This document shows positions 7,784-60,159 of a stretch of 64,000 bases of DNA, piece after piece. A program made the position numbers and the translations under genes. Source of the stretch: Dimorphilus gyrociliatus. Taxonomy: Eukaryota > Animalia > Annelida. Position 1 is the stretch's first letter. Every line of letters starts with the position of its first letter. Location of the stretch: positions 609,498 to 673,497 of the forward strand of contig CAJFCJ010000004.1 in assembly GCA_904063045.1 (NCBI GenBank). Reading direction: 5' to 3'. The notes beneath the pieces were generated by a model. That model saw nothing but the letters and a program-made list of their open reading frames with translations. It was not told the DNA's origin and ran no database searches.

Positions 7784-8774
7784 GGTTACATTAAATCGTG
7801 TATGTTGAATGAATAGTTGTTGGCGCTAATGTTCGGTCGTGACTCTATAGAAACGTGCATGAGAAACGGAAGAAGAGAAAGATTGGTAATATGCATAGAA
7901 ATAGCAGCGGTTTGTTTAAAGCTTATGCTTGTTGTATAAATATACCCTCAATTACATATTTTGGGTTAACTGTCTAGAATAAGGTAATGCTTTTTTCACA
8001 AATCTAAATAAACTGTTGGCCTTTAAACTAGCCTTATCGTTTATATTTCCTCTCTTAGCAATCCATCATTTTAAACTATAAAAATCTACAGGTTATCTGA
8101 CTATTGTTCTATCATACGATTCATTTAGATCTTTAACATTTCAATTTTGTTTATTCTTAAATATTAGTAATATTTAATGACATATTTAAAGAAAAAACAA
8201 TGTAAAAACGTATTCACATAAGTTACATATGTATATATTAGGTTTTTGTTTTTATCTATTTGTTTTCTTCTCTTTCCAATTGACCTCTCTCGTGAGGCGG
8301 ACTAACAAATCAGTCATTTACGCGGGAGGGACTATATATTTAAAACTCCCGCAGCAGCTATTCACTTATGTAATATAACGTAAATGTTAGTCAAATTACG
8401 CCCTTAATAGACTTATAATTAAACCCCGCTGCTATTTTTCATTCTCATAAAAAAAGTTTGCATTTTATTCGACGTCTACCTTTTTATCGATGAGATTATC
8501 TTGATAAGGAGGGGGGTTTTTTTTGATGCTTCAGGATGAAGAAATGTGGCTTTTACACACACATACACTCTCTCCCTCTTTCTTACCGACTCCCTACTAG
8601 TTTATTTCTTTTTGATAACATCACATTTGATAAAAAGGTAAATAGAAAGACGCCGAAAGAAATTTGTAAAAATGTCCATAACACAGATTGTAAAAAAAAT
8701 AATAATGTAACAAAACAACGAGGAAGGGAGGAATCGATTGGTTCCAGTTCTATCTCTCTTCCTCGATACGATTA

Positions 8775-9504
8775 TCATACTACGCTACACGCTTGTGAAT
8801 CGAGAAGCGTACTGTCTGTAATAGTATATTCTCCGGAAGTAGCTGACGACACGTCACTTGAATCATATTCAGATTTAGATACTGCTCTTGGACTATAACG
8901 ATTCGATCCTTCTATTGATAAATTCATATCTGTTATTGATCCGCGTCCACTGTCGGATTGTTTGTCTGAGTGCTGTTTATAAGTTTGTAGAAGCTGTTGT
9001 ACTCTCTCTTGGCCATCAGGAATTTTGTTTGATGGAGGCTGTTAGGAAAAAATAAAGAAAAATGCTCATGAATATTTAAATTTATTTAAGTATTATTTAT
9101 CCTTTAATTGGTTAGAATAATTCTAGAATGTCTCCTAATCGGTTTTAACCTGCTAAAAGGTTATTACGTCTACTTCCTAAATAAAGGAAAATAGAAAGGT
9201 GACGACGGACCAGAAGGGCGAAAGAGCGTCCATCCTATTACATAATAGCCTGGCATATTTATACTCGCGCGTCGTTTGCAGACGCCCTCTATTTACATTA
9301 CGAGCGTAAGAGTGTTGTGCTTGATATAGAATATTATTTGTATAAGCAGATACGGTTCACTATTAATTTGTCCTCACTAAAAATAATATTTTGTTTCAAG
9401 ACTATATAAGTAAAAGAACTATTTTGAAATACTGCACTTCCTAGCTCGTGTGATATTACCATATAGAAACTTAATCTATTCCAGCCACTCAATTTATTTC
9501 TTTA

Positions 9505-53119: not shown

Positions 53120-54440
53120 TCAAAAAACTCTTTCAACGTGGTGATCTGGATTGACCGCTGGACCACCCCCAGCCGCCCCGGGTCGATGAGCTCCGTGTCG
53201 TTGATTCCTTCTGGGTTGAGAGTACATTTCAAACATACCTGTCGTATATTGTGCAAGTGTTTTAGATAAATCTGAGGGCATAGGATCGGTGTAAAAGAGA
53301 TCATGTTCCAAAGCTGTGTCAGTTGTTATCCTTTGAGCTGGGTCTAATGTTAAAAGTTTGTCTAATAAATCTAAAGCGTATGGGTCTTTTACATATGCCT
53401 TTAGTCTTTCTTTCACCCGTCGTTTTGCTTGTCCTAACTTAATTTTTGAAAATAGGTCTAACTGATCAACTCCTGGCCAGACATCAGTTGTTATAGTACC
53501 ACAAAGATTCATAATCAAGTTTATTTGCTCTTGTTCTGTTGCACCCTGCATTATCGGTGTTCTTGTCCACAATTCAGCCATTATACAGCCTGTACTCCAC
53601 ACGTCAATTTGAGGCCCATAATTTCTTGCTCCTAACAGCAATTCAGGAGCCCTGTACCATAAAGTAACAACCCTATTTGTATATCGATGTTGTCTCGTTT
53701 GTGATGTGGCTCTTGCAAGTCCGAAATCAGCTAGTTTAATTTGTCCCTGACGAGTCACAAGAACGTTAGCAGATTTCATATCTCTGTGGAGAACTTTGTT
53801 TCCATGTATATAATAGAGTCCGTTTAAAATCTATGGAAAAGAAGGGAAACAACGATAGATTGTTGTATGTAAATATCACTAAGTATTTCGTTTTCTCTCA
53901 ACATCTTTAAAACATTTTGAACCTCCAGAAAGACGCTAAAATTAAAGATAAATAACGTACCTGCTGCATAATTCTCTTGACGTCGCCAAGATGAAATTTT
54001 ACTGTAACATTATTTAGTAATCCGGCTAAATCATGATCACAAAATTCGAAGACTAGATAGAATGATGTCTTAAAGCGATTATACTGAGTTGCTTTTGTTC
54101 TACATATTTCTAATAGATGGATGACGTTATCGTGTTTAAGCTGTTGTAATATTTTGATTTCTCTGATAGCAGTAATAGGAAATCCTTCTTTCTCATTGTC
54201 CATGATAATCTTTTTTAAGGCCACAAATTTTCTCTCACCATTTTTCGGTCTTGCTTTAAACACCTCACTGAATAGTAGAAGCATGGTCTACTTTATGTAG
54301 GAAATATGAATAAGTACTTACCCAAATGTACCATGTCCTACTTTTTGAACTTTTTCATAGTGTGCAAAACAATCTCGACAATGAGGAAACTCATAAGAAG
54401 CTAAAGGGTGAGGATGTGATTGATTATTTGAATTCGCCAT
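53120..54440 (-). CDS. CDK9: Cyclin-dependent kinase 9 (378 aa)
   Basis: Exons 54440..54322, 54267..53961, 53830..53120. GHGTFGEV, EGFPITAIRE, HRDMKSAN, DFGLAR, RYTNRVVTLWYR, and the CDK9-type C-terminal DPMPSDL...MFE. Confidence 0.93.
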
Positions 54441-54788
54441 GATTCGTAATAAAAGAGCCTAACAAAAATGGAAGACACCAGTTTTCGCTTAAGCATTATT
54501 TTCGTAATAGTATGTTTTGCTCAACATCAATTTTGTCTTTCAAATGATATGAATTTATTTTTGAGATTCACTTTTGAAAAGATTACATTCACATTACAAA
54601 AGATACTACATAAAATCACTAAGTGTAGAAATATCATAAAAATACACGAATCTACGCAACTTTAACAAAGTATAAAGATAAGACATAGATTTAGATATGA
54701 AAAACGAATATTCAGATTTTTGTCAAGTAAAAACGCATTCAAGAGAAAACTGACAAAAATTCTAAATGAATATCTGAAAAGAGATTAA

Positions 54789-57700
54789 TTAGGCATCTGT
54801 GAATTTACTTAATTCATGAACAGGTTCCATTTTTTGTTGTCGCTCACTACGTCTAATTCGTGCCCTGACTTCCAGTGGATCGTCAGGTCGAACTAATGGT
54901 TTCTTGTCAGGGGCGCGCATTTTCCATGTCACTTGTAAGTTCTGTAAAAAGGAAATGGATTAAAAGCTAATAATAAAGAATAAATGTTTATCAAACAGGT
55001 CTTAAACCATGCTATAAAACTTCATAACTTCAATATTACAACTAGCAACATGCAACTTTGCAACATATAAACAGTATAAATTTATGCTTTTATAAATATA
55101 AACATATCTTTATATTAATATATATTATGTATATACAATCATTCTTTTTCTTGGTAAAACCGTATTGGTAGGGAAGATAGCGTTTGTCTTTCACGGGAAA
55201 ACAATACCAACAAAGTTTTCCTAAAATAAAAACTAACAAAATAAAAATCCATCACTCTATTCTTCTATTTATCCATTCAATATCTCTTTTTCTATATCAT
55301 TTGATCATTTCTCTACGCCTATGCGTCCGTATAGATGAACAAATAAACTAAATGAACCAGTTAACAACATGCAAAAAGTCTTCATTTGAAAGGATTATAA
55401 GCGCATGCCTTTTAATACACGATTACGAACTAAAACGATGTTTCCCCAATTATTTACAAACATTTTGGGCCTTTATTCGCAGAAGGCCTGCGTTTAATGG
55501 TACTAGTTTGTTGTATAACCGTATGAGCAATTCTTGGTCCAAGAGCTTGTACTTTTTCACCTAATTTTTTAGGTACAGTACTTCTAATTCGCCATTGTAC
55601 TACAGGTTGCTGGTTGATCATAAGTAATCATCATAAAAAGTTAAGTAATACGTGAAAGAAAAGCTATAGATTACGAATTGTAATAATATTCTTAAATAAG
55701 TGTAAAAAGTGGATATAATCGGTATTTAAAAGCTCTTTACATACCTTGGCACCAGATTTATATTTGGTTGAAGCAACATATGAAGCTTTAACAGCCAGAA
55801 CGACTGCATTCATTAAATTCTTAGCAGCTTGTATTAGCGAGGTTGCACTGTCCAACTACAATAAAATTTATTGAAATTCTCTATTTATAGCGTTACTAAT
55901 AGTGATAAAATTACCCCAGAAACGATTAACTCTCCGCTTATATTTTGCACATCGGCTTTTACTTTACTGGTAATATTAAGTTGATGGCAGTAGAGGGCAA
56001 TTCTTTGTAGATAGGCTAACAGGTCTTTTTTCGATGCTGATTCTGGACAATGTTGAACGATTTCCTTACACAATTTATCTAGATTGGAGCCGGCTTCTGA
56101 AATCTTTTTAGCAGCGTTAATAACGTCCATTGTATTTTTTAGAGGGCCTCTTCCTCTGTAAAGTACAAAATGAAATGTTTGGTTAATATCTTATTTTTTG
56201 TTGTCCAAAATAAAAATAACAAAAAAATACTAACCTTGTGAAATCCGTCATTTCCATCATAATCATACACATTTGCTTGGCAAGAACGATAATTTCATTT
56301 CCGCTATCGTCCCATTTAGCGACTTCTCTTTCAAATCTCTTTCTTTCAACGAAGAAATGGGCAACTTGCTGATCAAAGTGTGCTCTTTGCTCTTCAGGCA
56401 TTTGATCAATAACCATTCTCATTTTAGCCCTATCGCTGGAATCGTCGATATGCTCTTTCTGAACATCATCTTGAGCCATTATCATGCCGCCTATAGATGA
56501 GAATATAAACAAACGCTAAAATATTTGCAAATGATAAAAATGAAAGAACGGTGACGGAAAAAGCACAAAAGATAGATAAAAGTCGTTTTTATTTTCCTTT
56601 ATACTATTATCGTTTTTTATAATACAAAGATGACTAAAAGTAATAAAAACCGTTATCGCTTCTTCTATCCATACTTCCTGTACCATATTCGTAAGAATAG
56701 CTACTATATGGATTCATACCATCCATATCCGACATCGATTGATCATAATCTTCACTCTGGGGAAAAAAATAATTAGAATGAATGTTGATATAGTTAGAGA
56801 ATGATTTGCTATTACTCTATTTAATAAAACGGATTGTTTAATATCTTTAACGCCTTCGTATATCAATCCGGCAGAATTAATAAATGTATCTTTATCGTCA
56901 GTCGAAAACTGAATTGACGGATTGCTCTCCATCTTGTCCAACACGTAGCGAAGATTGTTTATAAAATTAGGAACAGCTGAAAAGAAAGGTTATTGATGGA
57001 TAGGTAACATTCTTAATAAATATCATTAAATTTTTAGCGGATTAATTACTTTTATCTCTGAGTAAAATGACACTTTGTAAAACTCTCTCCGTGTAGGGGC
57101 CGGGCTGATATTTCTCCATTTCAACACCAACAACGTCAGCTATTCTCTGTGACCTTCCTATTAATTTACGACCATTTTCATGAAGAGCATCTATATTTCC
57201 CTCATCTAATGCTTGGATGCAACCCTTAACATCTTCTAATATATGATTTTCTGTATAAAAAAGATAAAATTTATGTAATTAAAATGCAGTAAGTTTCACA
57301 TCAATAGCATACCAGAAACATTTAGAAAATCTTCAATAAGCATAATATCGTCGATGGCATCTGTAAGTAATCTGGTCTGTTTTAGCCAGCTATCCTTAAA
57401 TACGTCCATATTTTCCAGGGCAACCTTCGAATCGGGTCTTAGAGCTAAAATTCTAGCGGCATTGAGAACCTTTCAAGTGAAATTAAATAAGAAAATTTAT
57501 TAAAATTTAATTGAAAAAAGAGTAAAAGGCGTCATAATCTTACTTGAGGGTACAAATTTTCAATGTTTGCAGCTGCCAAACGAACGAATTTCACACCTTC
57601 TTCATGATTAGACATAGAACAAGCGAGATTGGCAACCTCTACCATTTTTGATGCGTGCTCAGTAAATCTACGTCCGTATTCGTTTTCCACATCCTCTACT

Positions 57701-60159
57701 TTACCAGCTTTAGCAGCGTCGATCAAATCGAATAACGGACCGGAAGTATCGAAAAAAGTGTCAGAAACGTGATCAACAACGGCTCGCCTAAGCTATTATA
57801 TATCAAAAGAATAATCGTTGTTAGTTTTCGATTAATTGTTGTTCTTTTTAAAGAAAATATGAACAATTTTATAATATATACAAAATGGTGCATAAAAGTA
57901 TAAAGATAAAAATTCACATACCTGCTTTCTTAAGTCAGTAGTTCTTGTACAGACTTGGTCAATAGCTCTAGTAATATTGTTTGTTCTTTCCGAATTGCCC
58001 ATCTGTTCATATTTTGATTTTAATTTAGAAAAAGCCATAGGTTTTCGCTTTGTTTTATAGACTATCTTCAATAACAAAAACGGTTGCGAATAAAAAAGGC
58101 GCTATAACTATTATCTTTTGTACTGATAACGCGAAAATGATCGATTTATTATTATGATTTAATAGATAAGCATAATAATGCTATCTTATACCTTAAAGAG
58201 CTTATTGATTATTTAATTAGAAAAATGCTAATGTAGAGAAGTTAACTAATTGAGTTATATAATTTTCATATTTATATGGTTTGGATTGATCTAACATAAG
58301 GCGTTGCATAGATTGAGAGAAAAATAACAGTAACTTACATTTTTCATTGATTCCGTTAGAAGGTCCTGCAATGCTTGTCTGACAGCATTACATTCTTCAA
58401 CTATTCTATCCCTTCTTTCATCTCTTGTACAACTACTGTCAGCCATCAGAGCAGCCCCACTTATTATACTTTCCAGCCTTTCTTCTAGACTAGGACCCTG
58501 TCTTCTTCCGCCTTTACCAGAATCAGGATCCATTATTCGAATCTAATAAGTATAAATTCGATTCATTTTATTAAAAATATAAACGAAAACTCTATTACAT
58601 CGAATTCATCAAGCGCATTAGCTAATTCTCCTGGCCCATCGAATGGATGGCCATCCATTCCCTTTGATTGGGCTACTCCGGAAATTTGATCCACAGCATC
58701 GCATACTTGTTTCAACACATAATCCCGATTTGCTCTTGCAGCAGCTAATTCCGGATGTCGAACGTAAACTTTGGAAGCCGTCAGTAAAGGGAGAGTATTC
58801 GTTTTCAACATGGCTCTAGCAGAGGCCATTCTTTCTCTGTTATAAGGGTCTTTCAAATCCAATTGTCGTCTTCCAGCCCTTTCGCTCAAAGCCATAACAC
58901 CGGTGCCAAAATCTTTAAACGCAGATCTGAGTTCTTTTTCACTGGAAGCATCTCTTACTCTATCGAGATCGCTTTGAACCTACGGTAGATTGGAGAAATG
59001 TTATCATTATCAAAGTATAACATGAAAAAAATTGACTAATATTCGCTATGTACATTTTAAAGAATTAGTTTAGATATACATTTTTTGATACAAAAGCGAG
59101 TAACTGTCTACTGTATAGAAAATTAATTATATATAGAGTAATTACTTACAGTTCTTAACGCTTTCAACAAATTATTCACATCTACCATATCAGCAAGAAT
59201 CAAAAGTCTTGTTACAGCACCCAACAAAGCTCTTGCTGCTCTTACCATAGTACCTCTTTTCATTGACGAACAAGGATCCCCGGCAAAATCATCACTTGCC
59301 AATTTCATTGCATCGCCTGCAGTTCAAAGCACATATTAATAATACAGTAAATAAAATAACCTTATGAATAATAATTGATATTTACGAAGCGCTAGAGAAA
59401 AATTTATTTTAACGAGAATATAATTTTCGTTTTTTTTGCGCTGAATTATTGGATAAATATTATCTTAATAATATTCAAATATTATACAAAAGGGATATAA
59501 GAGTTGTGAATAAATATCCAGTAATTATAGAGAATTTGTTTCGGAGATTTCGTTAGCTTATTTGTTATTAGGAAACCTCTTAAACCGGCCTTTGAATAAG
59601 AAAGAATAATACTGTTGATGAAATCAAGCAAAAAAATTGGTGTGTTTCATATATAAATTCTCCCGATACAATACAACAAAGGCTTATGATAAGCTAAGGA
59701 CCAGCAAACTACATAGAGAAAATCGCGAGAACAAGATTAAACACGCCTCTCTGAGCATTCCATCAAGCATAATAAGATTTTGTTTCTATTTTACAAACCG
59801 GTTTTTTTAACTTCTTCAACAGCAGTAAACATTTCATTACGAATTTCGACATTTTCTTCAGCGATTTTCTGGCCTTCGTTGATAAAATGATCAATTGCCC
59901 TGGCAACGGCTGTACTGAGAACTTTAGCTTTTTTTGATCGTCCCTTTTTACCTCTAGTTGGACCTTTCTGACTAACTAAAGTAGTCACCTGCAATATTAT
60001 TCAACGGTTTTAAACACATTAAAGCACCAGCTCTTTCATACACACCTGTGTTACAAGCGGCTCTAGAGTTTTTTCCACGGATTTTGTTTTAATTTCGAGA
60101 TTCTTAGGATCCCATTGAAAATGTAGTGTAGACATTGGTTGAGGAGTTACCACAGACAT
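54789..60159 (-). CDS. CTNNA: Alpha-catenin (about 923 aa, 15 coding exons plus an alternative last exon)
   Basis: Exons 60159..60046, 59988..59799, 59316..59150, 58979..58599, 58542..58339, 58002..57922, 57792..57544, 57469..57313, 57250..57050, 56976..56816, 56756..56651, 56490..56235, 56155..55915, 55855..55745, 54941..54789; all GT-AG and in frame. WDPKNLEIKTKSVEKTLEPLVTQVTTLV, TDFTRGRGPLKNT, SLIQAAKNLMNAVV, WKMRAPDKKPLV. Confidence 0.96.
55454..55609 (-). CDS. CTNNA: Alternative terminal exon of alpha-catenin (QPVVQWRIRSTVPKK...KGPKCL*)
   Basis: Acceptor caaccag|, phase 0, 52 codons open to TAA; starts with the PVVQW motif homologous to the canonical last exon. Confidence 0.7.
   Translation of the reverse strand, partial: QPVVQWRIRSTVPKKLGEKVQALGPRIAHTVIQQTSTIKRRPSANKGPKCL

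What the first reader, a model, noticed from the sequence alone, without database searches (positions are those of the whole stretch)
54789..55744. Alpha-catenin has two tandem-duplicated, mutually exclusive last exons
Seen: after the exon ending ...KSGAK (phase 0, 55745) there are two acceptor-led, phase-0, stop-terminated exons of almost equal length: 55609..55454 (QPVVQWRIRSTVPKKLGEKVQALGPRIAHTVIQQTSTIKRRPSANKGPKCL*) and 54941..54789 (NLQVTWKMRAPDKKPLVRPDDPLEVRARIRRSERQQKMEPVHELSKFTDA*). Both begin with the homologous V-x-W-[KR]-x-R motif; the distal one is canonical. Established: the C-terminal extension of the alpha-catenin actin-binding domain contributes to F-actin binding, and vertebrates diversify alpha-catenin via paralogues and an alphaN insert. 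Inference: a single gene here makes two actin-binding-domain variants by alternative last-exon choice. I do not recall this being described.
Basis: partly seen in the sequence, partly recalled or inferred. Interest (0 to 1): 0.75.

Follow-up and report, generated by a model that had tools for sequence, protein, structure and literature searches.

The report
Alpha-catenin gene with two alternative tails
This small marine worm's single alpha-catenin gene (the protein that ties cell-cell junctions to actin) carries a second, evolutionarily conserved end-piece, so it very probably makes two proteins that keep the same anchoring tryptophan but differ in the tail that in mammals touches actin and senses force.

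Summary
After the exon ending ...KSGAK (55745, minus strand) there are two AG-led, phase-0, stop-terminated exons: 55609-55454 (51 codons) and 54941-54789 (50 codons, the canonical alpha-catenin tail).

The proximal exon is a real coding exon. In a sister species (L001-L003) the flanking introns cannot be aligned, yet the exon keeps:
- its AG acceptor, reading frame and stop position;
- 86 % amino-acid identity;
- mostly third-position changes (4/4/13), with dN/dS 0.15.

It has no Met there, and an in-frame TAG overlaps the acceptor. It can therefore only be read by splicing from the upstream exon.

An RNA assembly (X3) covers 54914-55611 without a break and stops 2 nt past the proposed acceptor. 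The 55612-55744 part of the intron is uncovered. No contig showing the 55745>55609 junction was listed, so use of that junction is inferred.

The RNA suggests an alternative 3' splice site 668 nt upstream, with the distal exon left as untranslated trailer. A separate poly(A) site is not excluded.

The two tails resemble each other only over the first 9-16 residues (the tryptophan-latch motif), so a duplication origin is plausible but unproven. The exon was not found in Lingula, in insects or in JGI metagenomes. I rate it a new variant of a known kind, of moderate interest.

The parts
55915..58002 (-). Upstream constitutive alpha-catenin exons seen as spliced RNA (57922-58002, 57542-57792, 57313-57467, 57050-57250, 56816-56976, 56650-56756, 56235-56489, 55915-56155). 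Some boundaries are ambiguous by 1-2 nt. The gene continues upstream of 58002.
   Evidence: Joints in RNA contigs of runs X1 and X3. Continuous reading frame after joining. 55-58 % identity to insect alpha-catenins.
55745..55855 (-). Last constitutive exon (LDSATSLIQAAKNLMNAVVLAVKASYVASTKYKSGAK), the end of helix H5 of the actin-binding domain. Donor AAG|gtatgt at 55745/55744.
   Evidence: Pfam Vinculin PF01044, E 1.8e-12. Joints 55855/55915 and 54941/55745 in three runs. 100 % amino-acid identity in the sister species.
55610..55744 (-). 135-nt intron that would be removed when the proximal acceptor is used. It is within the normal intron size of this gene (59-160 nt).
   Evidence: No RNA contig lies on 55612-55744 in X3, while both sides are covered. 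Not conserved in the sister species (about 63 % identity after gap-optimised alignment, the same as the other introns).
55454..55609 (-). Proximal alternative terminal coding exon: 51 codons plus TAA, phase 0, QPVVQWRIRSTVPKKLGEKVQALGPRIAHTVIQQTSTIKRRPSANKGPKCL*.
   Evidence: Conserved island between unalignable introns in L001:4585-4740. Nucleotide and amino-acid identity both 0.863, differences by codon position 4/4/13, dN/dS 0.15. Excess of synonymous changes, p 2e-4. Only this frame is open in both species. Covered by X3 contig 7.
55434..55453 (-). Short conserved stretch just after the proximal stop (TAAATAA....GAAACATCGTT). It could be a poly(A) signal (AATAAT here, AATAAA in the sister species), or a GTAAAT donor that begins 1 nt before the stop codon.
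   Evidence: Alignment A1 columns about 727-752. Motif scan. Function not tested.
54942..55433 (-). Non-conserved spacer. It is intron for the canonical isoform and apparently untranslated trailer for the proximal isoform.
   Evidence: Skipped by the 54941/55745 joint in X1, X2 and X3, but covered without a break by X3 contig 7 (54914-55611). About 60 % identity to L001, which is noise level.
54789..54941 (-). Distal canonical last coding exon: 50 codons plus TAA, NLQVTWKMRAPDKKPLVRPDDPLEVRARIRRSERQQKMEPVHELSKFTDA*. It corresponds to human alphaE-catenin residues about 854-903.
   Evidence: PDB alignments to CTNNA1/CTNNA2/HMP-1 tails. Spliced to 55745 in three runs. dN/dS 0.076 against the sister species.
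54565..54788 (-). 3' untranslated region of the canonical transcript. AATAAA lies just beyond it at 54559-54554.
   Evidence: X3 contig 6 covers 54565-54943. Signal scan.

Best explanation
The alpha-catenin gene on the minus strand has two alternative 3' splice acceptors after its last constitutive exon, which ends at 55745. The strong distal acceptor (54941) gives the canonical C-terminal extension. The weaker proximal acceptor (55609) removes only a 135-nt intron, and translation then runs through 51 different codons to a stop at 55454. The result is two alpha-catenins with identical helical bundles but different C-terminal extensions. Both keep the V-x-W-[KR]-[IM]-R 'tryptophan latch' (human W859/M861) and a leucine at the L869 position. 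The proximal tail lacks the equivalents of E865, K866 and V870. It also replaces the 35-residue distal 'force-detector' segment with another strongly conserved basic sequence that contains KRRPS. Shown here: both exons exist, the proximal one is under coding selection in two species, and it is present in RNA. Inferred: the exact junction, the shape of the transcript (run-on into the distal exon or its own poly(A) site), and any change in actin binding or force sensing.
For: Anatomy and frame. Conservation: P0287 led to genomic contigs of a sister species. In alignment A1 the introns are unalignable, but the proximal exon, its AG and its stop are kept. NG86 counts give 12.8 synonymous against 8.2 non-synonymous changes, dN/dS 0.15, with dS of neighbouring exons saturated at 0.8-3. 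Binomial p is 2e-4. All other frames, sense and antisense, carry stops. In the sister species an in-frame TAG overlaps the acceptor and the 51 codons hold no Met, so translation must enter by splicing. Expression: X3 contig 7 lies on 54914-55611 and ends at acceptor+2. That is the same '+2 shared AG' signature as contig 6 at the distal acceptor (54943). 55612-55744 has no cover. Residue mapping comes from the PDB alignment together with Mei et al. 2020 (PMC7588232) and Xu et al. 2020 (PMC7588230).
Against: No contig with the 55745>55609 joint was listed. The two low-depth metatranscriptomes (X1, X2) show only the canonical joint. Only two species could be compared. No protein or locus with this tail was found elsewhere. 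Exact look-ups of the peptide in public assemblies were blank. The proximal acceptor has a poor pyrimidine tract. The functional consequences are untested.
Confidence: 0.8

Rival explanations
1. The proximal exon is a cassette exon. It is spliced in at 55609 and out again at the conserved TT|GTAAAT (55458/55457) onto the distal exon. The frame then ends after three more codons (...GPKCLTYK*; ...GLKCSIYK* in the sister species). The protein is almost the same as in the best explanation, but the transcript differs.
For: GTAAAT overlapping the stop codon is conserved in both species and resembles this gene's donors. The joined frame stops within 12 nt in both species (my reading of the sequences).
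Against: No 55457>54941 joint was listed, and X3 contig 7 covers the spacer 54942-55453 without a break. The conserved letters are equally well explained by the stop codon plus a poly(A) signal.
Confidence: 0.12
2. Use of the proximal acceptor is unproductive or noisy splicing, or partial intron retention in a genome tuned to short introns. The open frame is not translated into a working protein.
For: The 803-nt intron is very long for this genome, whose median intron is 66 bp and where long introns are retained more often (PMC7854359). The junction itself was not seen. No homologue was found outside two close species.
Against: Noise or a purely RNA-level element does not predict an open frame kept in only one of six frames, changes concentrated at third positions, or dN/dS of 0.15 while the surrounding intron is scrambled. 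It also does not explain retention of the tryptophan-latch motif in register.
Confidence: 0.06
3. The conserved block is something other than an alpha-catenin exon: a separate small gene, an antisense gene or a regulatory element inside the intron.
For: A 70-codon ORF lies on the opposite strand in the window (55352-55564). RNA contigs carry no strand information.
Against: All antisense frames carry stops in one or both species. The sense frame has no Met in the sister species and starts exactly at a conserved AG. The substitution pattern fits the sense frame.
Confidence: 0.02

Closest known systems
alphaN-catenin isoform II (vertebrate CTNNA2, 48-residue insertion in the C-terminal region; Uchida et al. 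1994, as cited in PMC5505122)
   Same: Alternative splicing changes the actin-binding domain of an alpha-catenin without touching the rest of the protein.
   Different: It is an in-frame cassette insertion one intron further upstream, at the ...IVSG|LDSATS... boundary, as seen in the vertebrate-like protein P0018. The canonical tail is kept. Here the whole C-terminal extension is exchanged.
Metavinculin (68-residue insert in the vinculin tail; PMC7827843; PMC7588232)
   Same: A splice isoform of a vinculin-family actin-binding domain that alters how the domain engages actin.
   Different: It is an insert near the start of the tail bundle in a paralogous protein. It is a cassette, not a terminal-exon swap.
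The mammalian alpha-catenin C-terminal extension: tryptophan latch (W859), actin contacts 865-871, 'force detector' 872-906 (Mei et al. 2020, PMC7588232; Xu et al. 2020, PMC7588230)
   Same: The distal exon here encodes exactly this element. The proximal exon keeps the latch tryptophan, the hydrophobic residue at position 861 and a leucine at position 869.
   Different: The proximal tail has no counterpart of E865, K866 or V870, nor of residues 872-906. Mammals are not known to swap this segment; they use three paralogues with highly similar tails.
Tandem alternative exons in the actin-binding domain of Lingula anatina alpha-catenin (seen here, L004)
   Same: A spiralian alpha-catenin that diversifies its actin-binding domain by tandemly repeated alternative exons.
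   Different: A different exon is affected (the helix segment CP.S.SK.DL.AYL...HQLNITSKVKADV), there are three clearly homologous copies, and it is internal. Lingula has a single tail exon.

Membership tests
alpha-catenin (vinculin family, PF01044) | Vinculin-family helical-bundle sequence in the exons upstream | tested here: met
   PF01044 on exon 55745-55855, E 1.8e-12. PF01044 on most ORF fragments of the orthologous locus L001. 55-58 % identity to insect alpha-catenins over 570 residues.
alpha-catenin (vinculin family, PF01044) | Canonical C-terminal extension with the W859 latch and K866/K867/L869/V870 actin contacts | tested here: met
   The distal exon aligns to CTNNA1/CTNNA2 residues 857-900. 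The proximal exon keeps only the equivalents of W859, residue 861 and L869.
tandem-duplicated mutually exclusive exon pair | Same phase and nearly the same length | tested here: met
   Both are phase 0, with 51 and 50 codons.
tandem-duplicated mutually exclusive exon pair | Recognisable sequence homology between the copies | tested here: inconclusive
   Only residues 1-16 are similar. In-register shuffle p is 0.0036. A profile of 66 canonical tails aligns residues 1-9 only, at 4.5 bits, a score reached by 1.3 % of shuffles. BLASTP finds nothing.
tandem-duplicated mutually exclusive exon pair | Each mature RNA holds one copy, never both | tested here: not met
   X3 contig 7 runs unbroken from the proximal exon into the first 28 nt of the distal exon. 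At the protein level the two are exclusive, because the proximal stop comes first. Contigs cannot exclude a second RNA form that ends after the proximal exon.
alternative last exon with its own poly(A) site | Poly(A) signal and RNA 3' ends shortly after the proximal stop | tested here: inconclusive
   AATAAT/ATTAAA in the window and AATAAA in the sister species overlap or follow the stop, and about 25 nt are conserved. RNA 3' ends cannot be read from contigs.
alternative 3' splice site | Junction from the common donor (55745) to each acceptor | tested here: inconclusive
   55745>54941 is seen in three runs. 55745>55609 is not listed. The contig end at 55611 (acceptor+2) and the uncovered stretch 55612-55744 are indirect support.

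The most novel reading that the evidence does not exclude
An animal with a single alpha-catenin gene tunes junctional mechanosensing by splicing. One isoform carries the canonical actin-contact and 'force-detector' tail. The other keeps the tryptophan latch but swaps that tail for a different conserved, basic segment that may be phosphorylated (KRRPS). This would give an alpha-catenin with different, perhaps force-independent, actin binding or a new binding partner. It would be a natural counterpart of the tail truncation and swap experiments of Mei et al. 2020.
Probability: 0.3. Interest if true: 0.7.

Novelty: new variant of a known kind. Interest (0 to 1): 0.55.

Why it matters
In mammalian alpha-catenin the last 50 or so residues matter for function. 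W859 holds the domain together. Residues 865-870 touch actin. Removing residues 872-906 made actin binding independent of force in one study (PMC7588232) and slightly weaker in another (PMC7588230). A natural isoform that keeps the first element and replaces the other two is a ready-made experiment on what this tail does. It comes from an animal with one alpha-catenin gene and a very small genome. It also shows a route to alpha-catenin diversity other than the gene duplication used by vertebrates. I found no paper describing an exchange of the alpha-catenin tail. That library is incomplete, and the existing genome annotation could not be consulted.

Tried and rejected
**Searches with the proximal peptide that returned nothing**
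- Solved structures, Pfam and the ESM Atlas (best score 0.79, which is noise).
- The word-indexed protein search, which sees only proteins of 28-89 residues.
- Exact look-ups of the 51- and 55-residue products in public assemblies.
- A scan of JGI metagenomes with a two-species alignment of the peptide: 265 pattern matches, none confirmed. I ran no further search on the junction sequence, because this result already shows the exon is absent from that collection.

**Searches that were less useful than hoped**
The best full-length hit was an ant protein, and the follow-up search returned only insects, all with canonical tails.
- Naming further representatives gave rotifers, a horseshoe crab, a copepod, flatworms and an acanthocephalan, but no annelid or mollusc.
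- The Lingula locus has one tail exon only.
- Locus P0050 could not be read because the file was too large.

**Steps not attempted**
- A structure prediction of the domain with the alternative tail, and look-ups of full-length spliced products. Both would have needed a long spliced sequence typed by hand.

**Ideas rejected**
- Recursive splicing: there is no GT after the acceptor.
- An antisense gene: stops in all antisense frames.
- An independent small ORF: no Met in the sister species.

**Other remarks**
- The depth figures (174 against 820) are per-contig means, so they are not used to estimate isoform share.

Full report
**1. What is in the sequence**

The minus strand of 54565-58002 holds the 3' half of an alpha-catenin gene, which continues further upstream.
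- RNA contigs from three public runs give the exon chain 57922-58002, 57542-57792, 57313-57467, 57050-57250, 56816-56976, 56650-56756, 56235-56489, 55915-56155, 55745-55855 and 54941-54789.
- Joined, these read as one open frame, 55-58 % identical to insect alpha-catenins.
- The exon 55855-55745 ends ...ASTKYKSGAK and is followed by gtatgt.
One is 55609-55454 (ccag|CAACCT, 51 codons, TAA). The other is 54941-54789 (ttacag|AACTTA, 50 codons, TAA). Both are in phase 0 with the upstream exon.
- The distal peptide aligns with residues 857-900 of solved alphaE/alphaN-catenin and with C. elegans HMP-1.
- The proximal peptide has no match in PDB, Pfam or the ESM Atlas.

**2. Is the proximal frame more than chance?**

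Taken alone it would not be convincing. The window is AT-rich, and open frames of 50-70 codons occur in its introns on both strands.

The decisive evidence comes from a relative.
- A search with the neighbouring exon found P0287. It is 100 % identical over the exon but reads through into a different intron.
- It lies on genomic contigs from three runs, L001-L003.
- In the alignment of these loci with the window (A1) every intron and the 3' UTR are at noise level, 60-69 % after gap-optimised alignment of AT-rich DNA.
- The constitutive exons have saturated synonymous divergence (dS 0.8-3) and no amino-acid change.

Within the long last intron there is one conserved island, and it coincides with the proximal exon.
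- The AG is kept (TTAG|AAACC against CCAG|CAACC).
- The frame stays open for the same 51 codons, and the TAA is at the same place.
- Nucleotide identity and amino-acid identity are both 0.863.
- The 21 differences fall 4/4/13 over the codon positions.
- Nei-Gojobori counts are 12.8 synonymous on 36 sites against 8.2 non-synonymous on 117 sites, giving dN/dS 0.15. The canonical tail exon has 0.076.
- The excess of synonymous changes has a binomial p of 2e-4.
- The two other sense frames and all three antisense frames carry stops in one or both species.
- In the sister species the codon just before the exon is TAG, formed with the acceptor's AG, and the 51 codons contain no methionine.

This frame therefore cannot be an independent small gene. 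It can only be translated if it is spliced to an upstream exon in phase 0, which is what the exon ending at 55745 offers.

**3. RNA evidence**

Only assembled contigs were available.
- All three runs join 55745 to 54941.
- Run X3, the same organism, has spliced contigs and is therefore RNA. It also has a 698-nt contig lying unbroken on 54914-55611.
- Nothing in X3 lies on 55612-55744.
- The contig end at 55611 is the proposed acceptor plus the two letters (AG) that the upstream exon end (..CCAAG) and the intron end (..ACCAG) share.
- The same '+2' end is seen at the distal acceptor, where contig 6 stops at 54943 and the graph demonstrably branches between the spliced and unspliced paths.

I read this as a graph branch at 55609, meaning spliced and unspliced molecules both occur. 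This is an inference.
- No contig carrying the junction was listed.
- The assembler's pruning of short, lower-coverage links may or may not explain that absence.
- The two metatranscriptomes (X1, X2) are too shallow to show a minor form.
- The tool warns that contig depths cannot rank parts of a gene, so I give no isoform proportion.

**4. Transcript anatomy**

Contig 7 continues from the proximal stop through the non-conserved spacer into the distal exon. The simplest model is therefore an alternative 3' splice site 668 nt upstream of the canonical one.
- Only a 135-nt intron is removed, a normal size for this gene's 59-160-nt introns. The genome's median intron is 66 bp (PMC7854359).
- The rest, including the distal exon, becomes 3' UTR.

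Two other forms cannot be excluded.
- Own poly(A) site: the stop is overlapped by AATAAT (AATAAA in the sister species), and about 25 nt after it are conserved.
- Cassette exon: the same conserved letters form a GTAAAT donor. Using it would join the distal exon out of frame and stop after three more codons.

All three forms give essentially the same alternative protein tail.

**5. Relation between the two tails**

- The similarity is confined to the start: QPVVQWRIRSTVPKKL against NLQVTWKMRAPDKKPL.
- In register it scores 26. That is reached by 0.36 % of shuffles and by 7 of 43,753 windows in the whole 64 kb, two of which are the tails themselves.
- A profile built from 66 canonical tails aligns only residues 1-9 (sPiVvWkMK), at a score reached by 1.3 % of shuffles.
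- BLASTP sees nothing.
- The proximal exon actually fits the pan-animal consensus P-[IV]-V-x-W better than this species' own distal exon does.

An origin by duplication of the tail exon, followed by replacement of everything after the latch, is the most economical reading. I put it at about two in three. It is not demonstrated.

**6. What the swap would do (inference from published structures)**

The register comes from the PDB alignment.
- W6 of both tails corresponds to human W859, and residue 8 (M or I) to M861.
- Residues 12-17 correspond to E865, K866, K867, P868, L869 and V870.

What is known for the mammalian protein:
- W859 sits in a 'tryptophan latch', and the W859A mutation weakens actin binding about ten-fold.
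- Residues 865-871 contact actin directly.
- Constructs ending at 864 or 868 lose detectable binding.
- Residues 872-906 are invisible on actin.
- Mei et al. found that removing residues 872-906 makes binding strong regardless of load (the 'force detector'). Xu et al. saw a slight loss of affinity (PMC7588232; PMC7588230).

What the proximal tail does:
- It keeps W, I and R at positions 859-862, and a leucine at position 869, in both species.
- It has V/I, P, K/T, K and G where the canonical tail has D, K, K, P and V.
- It replaces the last 33 residues by KVQA[LI]GPRIAHTVIQQTSTIKRRPSANKG.KC., which is 30/33 identical between the two species. The corresponding part of the canonical tail is 26/32 identical.
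- It contains R-R-x-S, the textbook consensus of basophilic kinases (my knowledge, not tested).

My prediction is that the bundle stays folded, that the minor actin interface is altered, and that the force-dependent regulation is lost or replaced. None of this has been tested.

**7. Distribution and novelty**

The very short introns fit the genome paper.

The proximal tail was not found in any of the following:
- fragments of 28-89 residues in the large protein collection;
- 150 representative relatives of the domain;
- about 120 insect alpha-catenins;
- JGI metagenomes;
- the Lingula anatina gene, which has a single tail exon.

No other annelid could be reached with the searches left, so the age of the exon is unknown beyond 'shared by two species whose silent sites are saturated'.

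Four literature searches found splice variants of the domain (the alphaN-catenin II insert and metavinculin) but no exchange of the alpha-catenin tail.

I therefore class it as a new variant of a known kind: alternative splicing of a vinculin-family actin-binding domain.

**8. Verdict**

The junction is still to be seen directly. 'Mutually exclusive last exons' should probably be re-described as alternative acceptors of the terminal exon. The duplication origin remains open.
- Interest is moderate (0.55). The case is clean and testable and touches a debated element of junction mechanics, but so far it is confined to one small lineage and has no functional data.

Noticed in passing
L004:8086-9044 (Lingula anatina, LFEI02000551.1): The Lingula alpha-catenin gene has three tandem homologous exons for the actin-binding-domain segment CP.S.SK.DL.AYL..IAL..HQLNITSKVKADV...GE.L.SG, at 8086-8229, 8607-8753 and 8901-9044. 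Each has a cag/tag acceptor and a gta donor. Only the first is in the annotated protein XP_013419772.1. This looks like a mutually exclusive exon cluster.
   Followed up: partly
window 55454-55609 against L001:4585-4737: Synonymous divergence in the proximal exon (pS 0.35) is lower than in the constitutive exons next to it (0.50-0.74). This would be expected if splicing-regulatory sequence overlaps the coding sequence of an alternative exon.
   Followed up: no
window 54322-54565: The next gene on the same strand is a CDK-type kinase starting MANSNNQ... at 54440. Its RNA contig begins at 54527, only about 30-40 nt after the alpha-catenin AATAAA (54559-54554). The intergenic gap is extremely short.
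   Followed up: no
window 54829 (run X2): The 98 %-identical relative in a marine metatranscriptome has one extra base in the A-run of the distal tail exon. If real, it would shift the last 13 or so codons. At depth 4.6 in a homopolymer it may be an assembly error.
   Followed up: no
proteins P0225, P0207, P0171, P0018: Some insect alpha-catenin isoforms carry extra residues between ...STKYPRQ... and SPIVVWKMK, which is the same intron position as the one studied here. One example is a 31-residue insert in the damselfly protein P0225. The vertebrate-like P0018 shows an insert one intron upstream, where the alphaN insert is expected.
   Followed up: no
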